Below, in pieces: positions 47,167 to 51,975 of a stretch of DNA of 64,000 nt; within the stretch, counting starts at the first letter, position 1; each line of letters starts with the position of its first letter. The DNA lies in NCBI GenBank assembly GCA_030704615.1, contig CM060731.1, positions 80,786,001 to 80,850,000 on the forward strand, read 5' to 3'. The position numbers and the translations under genes were made by a program. This DNA is from Takakia lepidozioides. Lineage: Eukaryota > Plantae > Bryophyta. Under the pieces are notes generated by a model. It saw nothing but the letters and a program-made list of their open reading frames with translations, searched no databases and had not been told where the DNA came from.

Positions 47167-47505
47167 GCGTCAGGGGCAACCTCGTTCATCCTCGGATATG
47201 GATGATCTACTTGGATTCGGATGAATGTATCTATGTACGCAGTTACGTAGGCTCCTTGTGGTCCTGGGGTCTAGGGTTTGAATTCCTGGCGCCATCACAC
47301 CTAGCGTAGCGATGCTCGAAAAACCCCACAGTGAGAGAGAGAGAGGGATGGCGGCTTGCAGCAGGAGTGTCGTGCCAACATCTCCATGTATGCGTGTGTT
47401 TCTTTTTGTAGTTTGCGAGCCGCAATGATACTATTGCTGGCGAGGCGTATTGGTTCTTTTCGGTGACATGGCCCGAGCTTGTGCTTGCAGCTGACGGTGT
47501 GGTGG

Positions 47506-48567
47506 ATGGGGTTGACGGTGCATGCAGGGCGACATTGCTTCCAAGGTGTCAGTGTGCAGATACATGAGTGCTGCAAGGCTGGACTCGAGTTTTCCTGCTA
47601 TGGCTGTCAACGGCAAGCAGCCATCGGGTTCTCGTCGTATGCCGACCGCGATAGCATCAAATATGAGGATATTTACAACATAGATAATCTTCGGGCTGGC
47701 TACAACAGATTGAAGGCAACTGCATCTCCTGGAATCGACGGGAGAGCAAGAGCAGAAATGACGGAGAAGGGCCTTGAGAACCTATCTAAAGAGTTGAGAA
47801 GGCAGACTTATGCACCAAAGCCGTCCCAAAGAATCACGATTCCTACTCCGGATGGCGGTAGGCCTGTTTCTGTGGCTTCAATGGTTGACAAGGTTGTGCT
47901 ATCCACCTTGAAAGGGCTGGTGGAACCAGTAGTTGAGCCGACTTTCAGAGAATCAAGCCATGGTTTTCGTCCTGGAAGAAGCTGTCATACAGCTCTCCGA
48001 GAGCTCCGGCACTCGTGGATGGCAATTACTTGGCTTGTTCAGATCGATATTGAAAAACAGTTTGACAAGGTTCACCACAGTTTGCTTCTGAAGCAAATGT
48101 CGCAAGTGCTGCCATCGAAATCCCTACAGGATCTTATGCGAAAGCTACTGAACGCAGGCTACGTCGATTTACACAACCTGTCAGATTGCACACAGTACAA
48201 CAGAGGGGCTCTAATGGGCTCTATTATATCCCCGTTGTGTGCAAATATTTTCTTGCATGACTTGGACTGCTATGTTGAGTCTGATCTGACACCTGAGTAT
48301 AATGTAGGCGACCTGCGCCTCCTTATGTCGGGGAGCCCTAGCTGCCAAGCAGACGAAGGGTTCAAAAGACTGAAGTACCTCCGATATGCAGATAGCATCA
48401 TGTTAGGGGTTAAGGGGAGTAAACAAGATGCCTTAAACATGAGGGGGGCCGTGCAAAGTTTCTTGAAGAAAGAACTGAGGTTGAATATAATTGAGGACAA
48501 AAGTCTAGTACTCAATGCGAGGTCTGAAATGGCCAAATTTTTAGGAGCGCTAGTAGCATTTTCCTGA
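47506..48567 (+). CDS. Nuclear group II intron maturase/RT-like protein (RT0-RT7 only, catalytically degenerate, no domain X or endonuclease)
   Basis: RT0 YNIDNLRAGYNRLK..SPGIDG; RT1 YAPKPSQRITIPTPDGGRP; RT2 EPTFRESSHGFRPGRSCHTAL; RT3 WLVQIDIEKQFDKVHH; RT4 GALMGSIISPLCANIFLHDLD; RT5 YLRYADS; RT6 ELRLNIIEDKS; RT7 KFLG, then a stop. The first ATG in the open frame is at 47506; the true start is uncertain (ATG 47425 lies upstream of an in-frame TGA). Confidence 0.9.
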   Translation: MGLTVHAGRHCFQGVSVQIHECCKAGLEFSCYGCQRQAAIGFSSYADRDSIKYEDIYNIDNLRAGYNRLKATASPGIDGRARAEMTEKGLENLSKELRRQTYAPKPSQRITIPTPDGGRPVSVASMVDKVVLSTLKGLVEPVVEPTFRESSHGFRPGRSCHTALRELRHSWMAITWLVQIDIEKQFDKVHHSLLLKQMSQVLPSKSLQDLMRKLLNAGYVDLHNLSDCTQYNRGALMGSIISPLCANIFLHDLDCYVESDLTPEYNVGDLRLLMSGSPSCQADEGFKRLKYLRYADSIMLGVKGSKQDALNMRGAVQSFLKKELRLNIIEDKSLVLNARSEMAKFLGALVAFS

Positions 48568-50304
48568 GGAGTCCCAGTTCGGAGCAATTTCATGTTTACA
48601 ACAACACCAGTAGTGTCCAAAAATGACTCGCAGCAATCAAGCAACAAACCTATTGCTCAGGTAACTCATCCCTCTGTCCTCTGCTATTGATCTCTCTGGA
48701 TCCTTTCTCTGCAGCCTATTCCAATTTCTTATGGAGTTACTATTATACAAAGACCATAAATGTTTCAAGAGCATACAAACTCTTGGTATAAATGCCTGTC
48801 CTATAATGGCACTTGTGAAATATCCCCTTCTGCTCTCCTATTGTTGTTCTTGTTTGTTATGATCTTTATTTCTCTTCCTATGTCTTTCTTTGCAGGATGA
48901 CATGTTTACCTGCAGAGGATTGTGAAAATAAGCGGTAATGTCAGAATGGGCAACTTGTATACTGGTATGCGAGGCAGCGCCTTGGTGCAGACACTTTCCT
49001 TTGTTGACTGAGATATCTGACAACTTACCATGTCATTTGGTCTGTGCCCAGGTCAGACAAGGATTTGGCTACAAGGCCACTGCTTGGCATTGACGTATGT
49101 ACTATGTGGTGACATTAAAAGAGGGATATATCTTACCCACACCTGCTGTTTTCCGATCCTTGGTGGTAGGTCATTTTCTATTTCATTGGTATCTATTAAC
49201 GTTGGTGTCCACTTACAGTTCTGTCAAGCTAGTTGTGTTCTGAGTGGCAATGGCATTTTTCCATGTCTAAGTGAATTCAGTTTGGTCCATTTCAGAACTA
49301 TGCTGTATGGCAGGCTGAGTGGACGGTGTTGTTGCATTCATGTTTTCTTTGTTTCATAAAAGGCATGTGTTATTGCATCTACAACTCCCATCCATCATCT
49401 CAAGGTTTCGACTGTTCCCTATTGCACTCATATATGTGATGGCACTGATGGGATGGCTCAACCTTTTGTTAGCTGTAGTGTTTTGCTAACCAAATGCTAG
49501 ATTTTCATATCTGACAGTAAGTTTTTGTAAAACAGGAGCCATAGCTCTTTCTGCCTTTTTCTGAGAGAGCTTCATGCCATATCCTATGAAGAAATGACCA
49601 TTGTAATGTCCAGATTGAGTTAATATCAGGCTGATAGGAGCAAGGGGTGGTCAATTTAAACCTGCAGATACACACTGTCTACCCTGCAGACCCTTGAGGT
49701 GGTCATGGTTGAGATTTTATGAAGGTATGGGTTGGTGTAGGTTCCCACTCTTAACTCTTAATTGTGTGTTCTACTTGCAGGAAGTGAGTGGGCAGGAGAT
49801 ACAAGTTGTTGGGCATTTTAGGAATACTTGGATATCTCTGTAAGTAGATCTTTGGCATTGAAACTTAAGAGGATGTCCTTTAGAGACTCATTTTCCGAAT
49901 TCCTACATCCATCCAAAAGGCTCAGCATGGCGAAGCTGCTCTAATGGAAGTCCGTGCTGTGTAATATTCTTCTGGTTTCATTCTCGTTATGGACTCTCTT
50001 TCTTGCTGTTGGAGCTGCTGCACCCCTCTCTTCTGAAAAAATCTTCTATCAACCTTTCATCAACCTGTCATACTAAGAGATGGAAGGGATGAATTCTCAT
50101 GGCAAGATAGGGATATTCTACACAGGCAACCTGGGCAATCTGGGGTCCCTGTCTGATTATTTACATTAAAAGATAGCATTTGCGTAAGGATGTGGTGGGG
50201 GTATCTTGTGGTTGGAACATTGGAACATCCAATGCCAGTAATGTGGTCTTGACTTCATCTTTGTTGAGGTGCATTTTTTGTGATTATGAAGATAATCACC
50301 ACCA

Positions 50305-50375
50305 GTCAGTGGCTCAGTTGGAGTAGAGCCCTTTACTGCCACCAGGTGATTTTGGATTCAAATCCTGCTACTAGC
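50305..50375 (+). mobile_element. tRNA-derived SINE head / tRNA-like remnant
   Basis: A box TGGCTCAGTTGG and B-box-like GGATTCAAATCC; no valid cloverleaf. Confidence 0.5.
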
Positions 50376-50733
50376 TTCTTTGCTTGACTTTTATTTTTTG
50401 AACGCCTTGGGGTACATATTTTGGCTTGTCTGTAAGGAAGAGAAAGATTTCACTAAAATTTCAAAACATAGATCGTTGGCTGGGGCTTCAACGAGCTTAT
50501 TTTTAGAGTAGTTTTGCAATTTTTCTGATGTGTGGACATTCTTGTTTGGCCATAGTATCTTCAAAGTATAGCCAAGAATATACCAAATATCCCCTTGTGA
50601 GCACACATGTGACCATGCACATATGCTACTCCCATTGGGCTATCTATTGGATGTCAAACTCATGTAACATACTAAAACCTTGAAAAATGGGAGGTGGGGA
50701 GCAAAAGGAAGGGACCTTCAAGGCCACCATTTG

Positions 50734-50957: not shown

Positions 50958-51114
50958 CTAATCTCCCCTACTACTATAAGCTGGCATTCTTCATCTATGT
51001 AGTCTTTCACAACCTTCTAAATAGTGCAGCAATGTCAACTTCAGTATCCCTGCTCATATGCCTGCTGCATTCCGTCTTATTGTTGCTTTGACAATTACTC
51101 TAATTGAGGCAATT

Positions 51115-51975
51115 CTCTAAATGTGGCTGTTCGGGGTGAGTTTGGCATTCTATCCTTAAGCTCCCGACAGATGAATTCAAGGTCAGATGGTGGGGTCAGC
51201 TGCAACATATGCCCAACACCAGATATCCTAAGTTAATTGACTCTATATCTTGGAAACAGAACCGCCCTGTCAAACAGGCTAAGTCCTGGCAGAAGAGAGT
51301 AGAAGAGATTCTCAAGGACCTGGACCTGGATCTGCAAGTCTTGACCCTGCTGGATAAATCTGACTTGGAGGCTGTAGTGTCCAAAGCCATGTCTGTTGCC
51401 ATGAGATTGTCTGATGAAAATGAAGTTAGGCAGAAAACTTTCCTGAACTTGTTTCCAGTCAGTGAGGACATCTTGGATGACCTCAAGGGTCTACCCACTC
51501 TCGGCACTATACTGAAATTTAAACTCAGGGCAGGAAGCCTACCTTTGAACAGCAAACAGAAGCAGAGAGGAAAGGGAGAGTGCAATGCCCGTTGTGTGGG
51601 CAATCTGAAGACAGTATTCATTTTCTGATACACTGTCCGGGGTTCTCTCACCAAAGAGACGCTCTCTTCAACTCTATCAAGGGAATTGTGCATGTACCCC
51701 TGTTTACCAACTTTGAAAGTCTCGAGGCTGAGCCAAAAGCCCAGGCCCTCCTGAGGCCTAGTTTTTGGGCAAATCACACACAGCAGATTGATGCTGTGTG
51801 AAGGGATTTCTAGAGGATATCTGGAAAACCCGGATTAATTCTTTATATGAAGGTAAGTCTTACTACCAACGTCAGCCCCTGACAGAGGTAGGTTCTGTTC
51901 CTTCTGTTCCCGCTCAAACTGGGCGCGGGGTCAATGGCCACAAGGCTACGGCAAAACAACGTCTTATGAGTACAA
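51115..51975 (+). mobile_element. 5'-truncated non-LTR retrotransposon (LINE) ORF2 C-terminus with a CCHC finger (RTEX-like, clade tentative)
   Basis: 16-bp TSD TCTAATTGAGGCAATT (51099-51114 / 51976-51991); frameshifted translation MPNTRYPK...KFKLRAGSLPLN...CPLCGQSEDSIHFLIHCP...FLEDIWKTR. Confidence 0.85.

What the first reader, a model, noticed from the sequence alone, without database searches (positions are those of the whole stretch)
47386..49800. Stand-alone, nuclear-domesticated group II intron maturase reduced to a catalytically dead RT domain
Seen: an open ~1.06-kb frame with RT0-RT7 in order and specific loss of polymerase residues (IPK>IPT, PQG>LMG, YADD>YADS), while structural motifs are kept. 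It stops right after RT7, so there is no thumb/domain X and no HNH. I found no group II domain V/VI or organellar exon in the flanks, and the base composition matches nuclear genes. The non-RT N-terminal extension ends ..RQAAIGFSS, like an organellar presequence. Spliceosomal signals follow the ORF (donor CAG|GTAACT at 48661, polypyrimidine acceptor at 48895, another acceptor at 49780). Known: plant nuclear maturases nMAT1-4 retain domain X and have different RT5 motifs, and the isolated maturase RT domain binds intron domain IV. Inference: an independent, undescribed organelle-to-nucleus maturase transfer yielding an RT-only RNA-binding factor. It could be a trans-acting splicing helper or a dominant-negative regulator of intron splicing or mobility, rather than a passive NUMT.
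Basis: partly seen in the sequence, partly recalled or inferred. Interest (0 to 1): 0.85.

Follow-up and report, generated by a model that had tools for sequence, protein, structure and literature searches.

The report
RT half of split moss maturase
This moss nuclear gene encodes the front half of a mitochondrial intron-splicing protein whose back half is a separate nuclear gene in other mosses; both genes were already noted in Physcomitrium, but the conserved two-piece design has not been tested.

Summary
A spliced, transcribed nuclear gene (ATG 47348, intron 47388-47527, stop 48567, 359 aa) encodes RT0-RT7 of a group II intron maturase with IPT, LMG and YADS in place of IPK, PQG and YADD. 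It has no domain X and no intron RNA around it. 'Independent, undescribed' is not supported. The donor is the mitochondrial maturase of intron atp9i87g2. The gene is the earliest-branching orthologue of a moss-wide nuclear family: 13 proteins all end 57 residues after YAD, and omega is about 0.09. The host is probably Takakia. Two Physcomitrium nuclear genes like mat-atp9i87g2 are already in the literature (PMC7049729, citing Guo & Mower 2013, which I could not read). Added here: mosses also carry a nuclear domain-X-only family from the same donor. RT covers residues 236-578 and X covers 604-748 of the 749-aa donor, without overlap. Best reading: a maturase split into two imported proteins that together splice atp9i87g2 and perhaps nad2i156g2. 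Function is inferred. The X gene was not verified in this genome; the scan noted an RT-less domain X gene on other DNA of it (s1-454797, unchecked).

The parts
47348..47387 (+). Coding exon 1 (13 codons + 1 nt), start of a probable mitochondrial presequence; an in-frame ATG at 47312 is a possible alternative start
   Evidence: RNA joint 47387>47528 GT..AG in run X2; in-frame translation. Targeting not tested.
47388..47527 (+). Spliceosomal intron 1, 140 nt, phase 1
   Evidence: one contig, depth 31; ends GTATGC..CATGCAG
47528..47655 (+). Rest of the non-RT N-terminal extension (exon 2, 5' part)
   Evidence: No match to the donor before protein residue 57
47656..48567 (+). RT0-RT7 fingers/palm domain from mat-atp9i87g2 residues 236-578, RT4-RT5 insert shortened (36 aa against 72-107), then stop
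   Evidence: AlphaFold pLDDT 90.7, pTM 0.87; best fold matches are group II maturase RTs, TM 0.73-0.78
47839..47847 (+). RT1 IPT (K to T shared by all 13 moss nuclear copies; IPK in the mitochondrial donors)
48211..48219 (+). RT4 LMG in place of PQG (PQ lost in all moss nuclear copies)
48385..48396 (+). RT5 YADS (YADS/YADN/FADN/YADR in orthologues; YADN and YADE in land-plant donors; YADD in an aquatic relative)
48661..48895 (+). 3' UTR intron 2, short form (235 nt); alternative acceptor at 49051 (391 nt)
   Evidence: joints in runs X1 and X2; GT..AG ends
49166..49780 (+). 3' UTR intron 3 (615 nt; partly retained in both runs)
49781..50538 (+). Last 3' UTR exon, as far as contigs reach
   Evidence: table 8

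Best explanation
In the ancestor of mosses, the maturase of mitochondrial intron atp9i87g2 moved to the nucleus and ended up as two genes: one for the RT fingers/palm (this gene) and one for the thumb/domain X, each with its own N-terminal extension. SHOWN: origin, orthology, shared end point, purifying selection, spliced transcripts, an intact fold, and a complementary X-only family in Physcomitrium, Ceratodon and Sphagnum. INFERRED: both proteins are imported into mitochondria. The RT half anchors on intron domain IVa through RT0 and contacts domain I, the X half holds the EBS-IBS and splice-site region, and the RNA (perhaps with a direct contact) brings them together. Together they promote splicing of atp9i87g2, whose own ORF is degenerate in mosses, and possibly of its family-F07 paralogue nad2i156g2. 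No reverse transcription or mobility.
For: Donor: flanks of the closest mitochondrial ORFs are atp9 exons followed by GTGCG, and the cluster holds the named Mat-atp9i87g2c. Trees: window sister to all other moss nuclear copies, together with land-plant atp9i87 maturases. All 13 nuclear RT proteins end 57 aa after YAD; six loci have a true stop at the same codon. Omega 0.09-0.10, lnL -4483 against -4934 with omega fixed at 1; window against mitochondrial copies 0.14-0.16. X-only family 60-62% identical to donor residues 604-748, one clade (99/98) among atp9i87 X domains (87/99), no overlap with the RT half; on a different chromosome in Physcomitrium. Literature: moss mitochondrial ORF degenerate and two similar nuclear genes (PMC7049729); fingers-palm and thumb both essential for splicing, anchor at DIVa (PMC7641739); F07 membership (PMC10012718).
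Against: No functional data. The X gene was not retrieved from this genome (only an unchecked scan note; a look-up by sequence was blank). Mitochondrial targeting untested, and the N-terminal 55 aa are only weakly basic (5 R/K, 4 D/E). Intron 1 phase differs from Physcomitrium (1 against 0). Moss mitochondrial pseudogene copies were not in the tree, so parallel transfers are not formally excluded. The state of this species' own atp9i87 ORF is unknown. No RT-X contact was modelled.
Confidence: 0.62

Rival explanations
1. The two halves come from the same donor but now work separately: the RT half is a stand-alone RNA-binding or chaperone factor for atp9i87g2 or other introns, and the X half serves other targets.
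For: Isolated maturase RT domains are stable folds (PDB 5hhj/5hhl match, TM 0.73-0.78). The genes are unlinked. Sphagnum has two X paralogues, while only one RT type was found.
Against: The halves tile the donor, losing only a 25-residue linker, and both domains are needed for splicing in LtrA.
Confidence: 0.2
2. Dominant-negative regulator that competes with full-length maturases for intron domain IV and so limits splicing or mobility.
For: RT0 is kept and the thumb is missing. 3' UTR introns 93 nt after the stop could allow regulation by decay.
Against: The cognate full-length maturase is reported degenerate in moss mitochondria, so there is little to compete with. The X half is conserved separately.
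Confidence: 0.05
3. Independent transfer in this lineage, parallel to the one in other mosses.
For: Short branch; 70-72% identical to liverwort mitochondrial copies, more than to other moss copies. Different 5' intron phase; no synteny within 10 kb. Moss mitochondrial copies are absent from the tree.
Against: Shared stop codon position, K-to-T change, PQ loss and insert deletion. Branching order matches the species tree. AU p 0.003 against grouping with the available mitochondrial copies.
Confidence: 0.08
4. Passive NUMT or decaying pseudogene.
For: A divergent copy or allele in run X2 has a premature stop at 47827.
Against: Intact ORF; run X1 contig identical over 1097 nt; omega far below 1; no intron RNA or mitochondrial flanks.
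Confidence: 0.02

Closest known systems
Physcomitrium patens nuclear mat-atp9i87g2-like genes (XP_024356889, RT; XP_024388226, domain X); Guo & Mower 2013 as cited in PMC7049729
   Same: Same donor, same RT-only layout and end point; 58-59% identical; one clade. That these two accessions are the two genes of the paper is my inference.
   Different: This copy is the earliest branch, keeps 7 more residues of the RT4-5 insert, has a different 5' exon layout and has 3' UTR introns. The papers I could read do not describe the two genes as complementary halves.
Mitochondrial mat-atp9i87g2c (Phylloglossum WRW51149, Treubia TrlaMp66, Isoetes, Marchantia)
   Same: Direct donor; 58% over residues 236-578, 70-72% in the core; already YADE or YADN
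   Different: Intron-borne, in frame with atp9 exons, RT and X in one chain, longer RT4-5 insert
Angiosperm nMAT1-4 and Physcomitrium mat-nuc1
   Same: Nuclear maturases of mitochondrial intron origin; nMAT1-4 act in trans on mitochondrial introns
   Different: Donors are other intron families (F03, F10, F01); nMATs carry RT and X in one protein (and own knowledge)
Isolated maturase RT domains, PDB 5hhj/5hhl
   Same: Same boundaries and fold (TM 0.73-0.78)
   Different: Engineered fragments of bacterial class IIC proteins
Genes split on transfer to the nucleus: angiosperm rpl2, chlorophycean/apicomplexan cox2a and cox2b (own knowledge, not checked here)
   Same: One mitochondrial ORF becomes two imported parts
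   Different: Structural subunits, not splicing factors

Membership tests
Moss nuclear mat-atp9i87g2 RT-half orthologues | One clade with the Physcomitrium and Sphagnum nuclear copies, next to atp9i87g2 maturases | tested here: met
   (99/98 and 100/99)
Moss nuclear mat-atp9i87g2 RT-half orthologues | Shared stop 57 aa after YAD, K to T in RT1, PQ loss, short RT4-5 spacer | tested here: met
Moss nuclear mat-atp9i87g2 RT-half orthologues | Conserved gene neighbourhood or 5' intron position | tested here: inconclusive
   No synteny within 10 kb; intron 38-43 aa upstream of RT0 but phase 1 against 0
Nuclear-encoded organellar maturases (nMAT type) | Nuclear, spliced, expressed, under purifying selection, free of intron RNA | tested here: met
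Nuclear-encoded organellar maturases (nMAT type) | RT and domain X in one polypeptide | tested here: not met
Nuclear-encoded organellar maturases (nMAT type) | Mitochondrial import and effect on intron splicing | not testable with these tools
   Only composition of the N-terminus
nMAT1-4 clades | Nesting with nMAT1/2 (F03) or nMAT3/4 (F10) | tested here: inconclusive
   nMAT sequences were not in my trees. The window nests with atp9i87g2 (F07) maturases, and one search places nMATs with other families.
Mobile group II intron | Domains V/VI, YADD, domain X, En | tested here: not met
Recent NUMT | Near-identity to mitochondrial DNA including non-coding flanks | tested here: not met
   74-77% to liverwort/lycophyte copies, coding part only. 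This species' mtDNA was not available.
Split maturase (RT gene plus X gene) | A complementary X-only nuclear gene from the same donor in the same genome | tested here: inconclusive
   Met for Physcomitrium and the genus Sphagnum. Not retrieved for this genome; unchecked note s1-454797.

The most novel reading that the evidence does not exclude
Mosses have kept since their origin a naturally bipartite maturase whose fingers/palm and thumb are separate nuclear-encoded proteins that reassemble on the intron RNA and are both needed for splicing, and this two-part mechanism has not been recognised in print.
Probability: 0.3. Interest if true: 0.75.

Novelty: new variant of a known kind. Interest (0 to 1): 0.52.

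Why it matters
Maturase RT and thumb domains are homologous to the core of spliceosomal Prp8, and both are needed for group II splicing. A natural case in which they are separate genes, conserved across mosses and present in a model with easy knockouts (Physcomitrium), makes it testable whether the two domains work in trans and what each contributes. It would also explain how moss atp9i87g2 splices after losing its own ORF. The gene itself is an orthologue of one already noted in 2013, which caps the surprise.

Tried and rejected
Rfam scans of the window: no intron RNA. tblastn of domain X queries against the window and flanks of the Physcomitrium and Sphagnum RT genes: nothing, so X is not a downstream exon or a close neighbour. 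The transcribed 3' exons show no similarity to domain X. First guesses for the donor (rrnS intron from the automatic name 'ymf40'; liverwort mat-free/mat-nuc1) were dropped when the flanks showed atp9 exons. Guo & Mower 2013 is not held. Searches for 'split maturase' and for gene fission gave no papers; the library lacks most subscription papers. Pairwise dS between deep moss lineages is saturated; one row (L014) was mis-cut by an intron and was fixed. A first AlphaFold run on 11 sequences was poor (pLDDT 59) and was redone with 122. The Atlas returned only generic bacterial RT clusters. No record held the neighbouring PLD protein exactly, so the species is inferred. The bacterial promoter scan is irrelevant here. 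No dN/dS for the X genes, for want of DNA.

Full report
1. Observation. The + strand holds an open frame from 47479 (first ATG 47506) to the stop at 48567. It matches Pfam RVT_1 (E 4e-24) and the group II RT/maturase model TIGR04416 only over positions 2-265 of 353, so the thumb part is absent. Domain X queries find nothing in any frame of the window, and Rfam finds no group II RNA. An AlphaFold model from 122 sequences is confident throughout (pLDDT 90.7, pTM 0.87) and matches group II maturase RTs, including the isolated RT-domain crystals 5hhj/5hhl.

2. Gene structure. Contigs from two studies, whose GT-AG joints mark them as RNA, cover the gene. Introns: 47388-47527, 48661-48895 or 48661-49051, and 49166-49780. 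The first joins a 40-nt exon starting at ATG 47348 in frame to the RT frame, giving 359 aa with about 55 non-RT residues at the front. An in-frame ATG at 47312 is possible. The other introns lie in the 3' UTR. All database searches used exon-2 references only, and a search with the joined model was left out. The two exons were joined only inside local scripts, to check the frame and for local alignments and trees.

3. Host. The neighbouring PLD zeta is closest to moss proteins (top hit unnamed, 74%; Physcomitrium 66%). The scan covers 5084 windows of 64 kb, about 325 Mb, the published size of Takakia lepidozioides, which is sister to all other mosses (PMC13120521). The gene branches in exactly that position. 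Takakia is an inference, not a look-up.

4. Donor. The closest mitochondrial proteins are Treubia TrlaMp66 and Phlegmariurus HusqMp08 (72-73%). Fetched loci show such ORFs in frame with atp9 exons up to nucleotide 87, followed by GTGCG, and the same cluster holds a named Mat-atp9i87g2c of 749 aa. DNA identity of the window to these copies is 74-77% and limited to the RT coding part, so this is not a recent NUMT. The land-plant donors already read YADN or YADE: loss of the catalytic Asp is not an innovation of the nuclear gene.

5. Orthologues. Searches return a family of nuclear moss proteins, 55-65% identical, on Sphagnum and Physcomitrium chromosomes and in unnamed assemblies taken to be mosses. 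All 13 compared end exactly 57 residues after YAD, share K to T in RT1, lack PQ and have a shortened RT4-RT5 insert (21-36 aa against 72-107). Six loci have a real stop at the same codon. The window is sister to all of them (100/99; 99/98), and grouping it with mitochondrial copies is rejected (p-AU 0.003). Omega is 0.09-0.10 over the tree, with lnL about 450 units above omega = 1; near 0 among Sphagnum copies; and 0.14-0.16 between the window and mitochondrial copies. One old transfer, kept by selection, is the simplest account. Caveats: moss mitochondrial pseudo-ORFs and nMAT1-4 were not in the trees, 5' intron phase differs, and no synteny was seen.

6. The missing half. Searching with domain X of a full-length relative found a second moss nuclear family with domain X only, in Physcomitrium (XP_024388226), Ceratodon and Sphagnum. 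On the 749-aa donor the window protein covers residues 236-578 and these proteins 604-748, with no similarity between the two. They form one clade (99/98) among atp9i87 X domains (87/99) and are 60-67% identical to the donors. In Physcomitrium the two genes lie on different chromosomes. I could not retrieve the X gene of this genome. The scan noted an RT-less domain X gene on another piece (s1-454797), which gave me the lead but is unchecked.

7. Mechanism. In LtrA the N-terminal extension anchors the protein at domain IVa, fingers-palm and thumb both contact domain I, and both are essential for splicing (PMC7641739). The window protein keeps RT0 and the fold but not the polymerase residues. 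The intron atp9i87g2 persists in mosses with a degenerate ORF (PMC7049729), and nad2i156g2 is a paralogue of the same family (PMC10012718). Most likely (0.62) the RT half and the X half are imported separately and together replace the lost maturase on atp9i87g2, perhaps also on nad2i156g2. Import, binding, cooperation and targets are inferred. Rivals: independent roles for the halves (0.2), parallel transfer (0.08), dominant negative (0.05), pseudogene (0.02).

8. What is known. PMC7049729 states that two Physcomitrella nuclear genes resemble mat-atp9i87g2 and may act as splicing factors, citing Guo & Mower 2013, which I could not read. So the transfer is described. Whether the two genes were recognised as complementary halves I cannot tell; no held paper says so, but the 2013 authors may well have seen it. 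The protein works like an nMAT but fails the one-chain RT+X test, so I file it as a variant of a known kind.

9. Verdict. Real and under selection; an orthologue of a gene already noted. The interesting part is the conserved split into RT-only and X-only genes, which can be tested by knockouts in Physcomitrium. Interest 0.52. Novel case: probability 0.3, interest 0.75.

Noticed in passing
window:47386-48730 (runs X1, X2): A second, about 95% identical transcribed copy or allele appears in the RNA contigs. In X2 it carries CAA to TAA at 47827, so it is probably a pseudogene copy elsewhere in the genome or in that accession.
   Followed up: partly
window:48568-49780: Two 3' UTR introns, the first 93 nt after the stop, with an alternative acceptor and retention; a layout that could expose the mRNA to nonsense-mediated decay. 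The Physcomitrium orthologue has none.
   Followed up: partly
window:2682-6071 (-): Phospholipase D zeta encoded as one 1129-aa open frame without introns; best named hit Physcomitrium 66%. Possibly a retrocopy.
   Followed up: partly
window:43851-45169 (-): First exons of a DEAD/DExH helicase (Pfam DEAD E 3e-11) that looks from memory like the plastid splicing helicase ISE2, 2.2 kb upstream of the maturase gene and divergent from it. Identity not tested.
   Followed up: partly
window:46142-46991 (-): Small heat-shock protein (HSP20 E 2e-8) between the helicase and the maturase gene; transcribed.
   Followed up: partly
window:8208-9680 (+): Single-frame 490-aa BTB/POZ-type protein (PF25553 weak).
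   Followed up: no
window:50734-50957 and 51108-51800: Tandem duplication of about 110 nt, followed by a very high-copy repeat (summed contig depth 1000-5000) that looks like a LINE 3' part.
   Followed up: no
P0449/P0487 and P0460/P0465: Sphagnum has two paralogues of the domain-X-only gene, both with an acidic stretch before the domain.
   Followed up: partly
L101:3286-5735; P0004: Liverwort-type mitochondrial mat-atp9i87g2c copies (Treubia and L101) are frameshifted around RT5, so RT1-4 and RT5-X lie in different frames.
   Followed up: partly
L009:5001-7319: A full-length relative with YADD (60% in RT) sits in an intron-rich atp1 gene from an aquatic metagenome; sister to the land-plant atp9i87 maturases.
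   Followed up: partly
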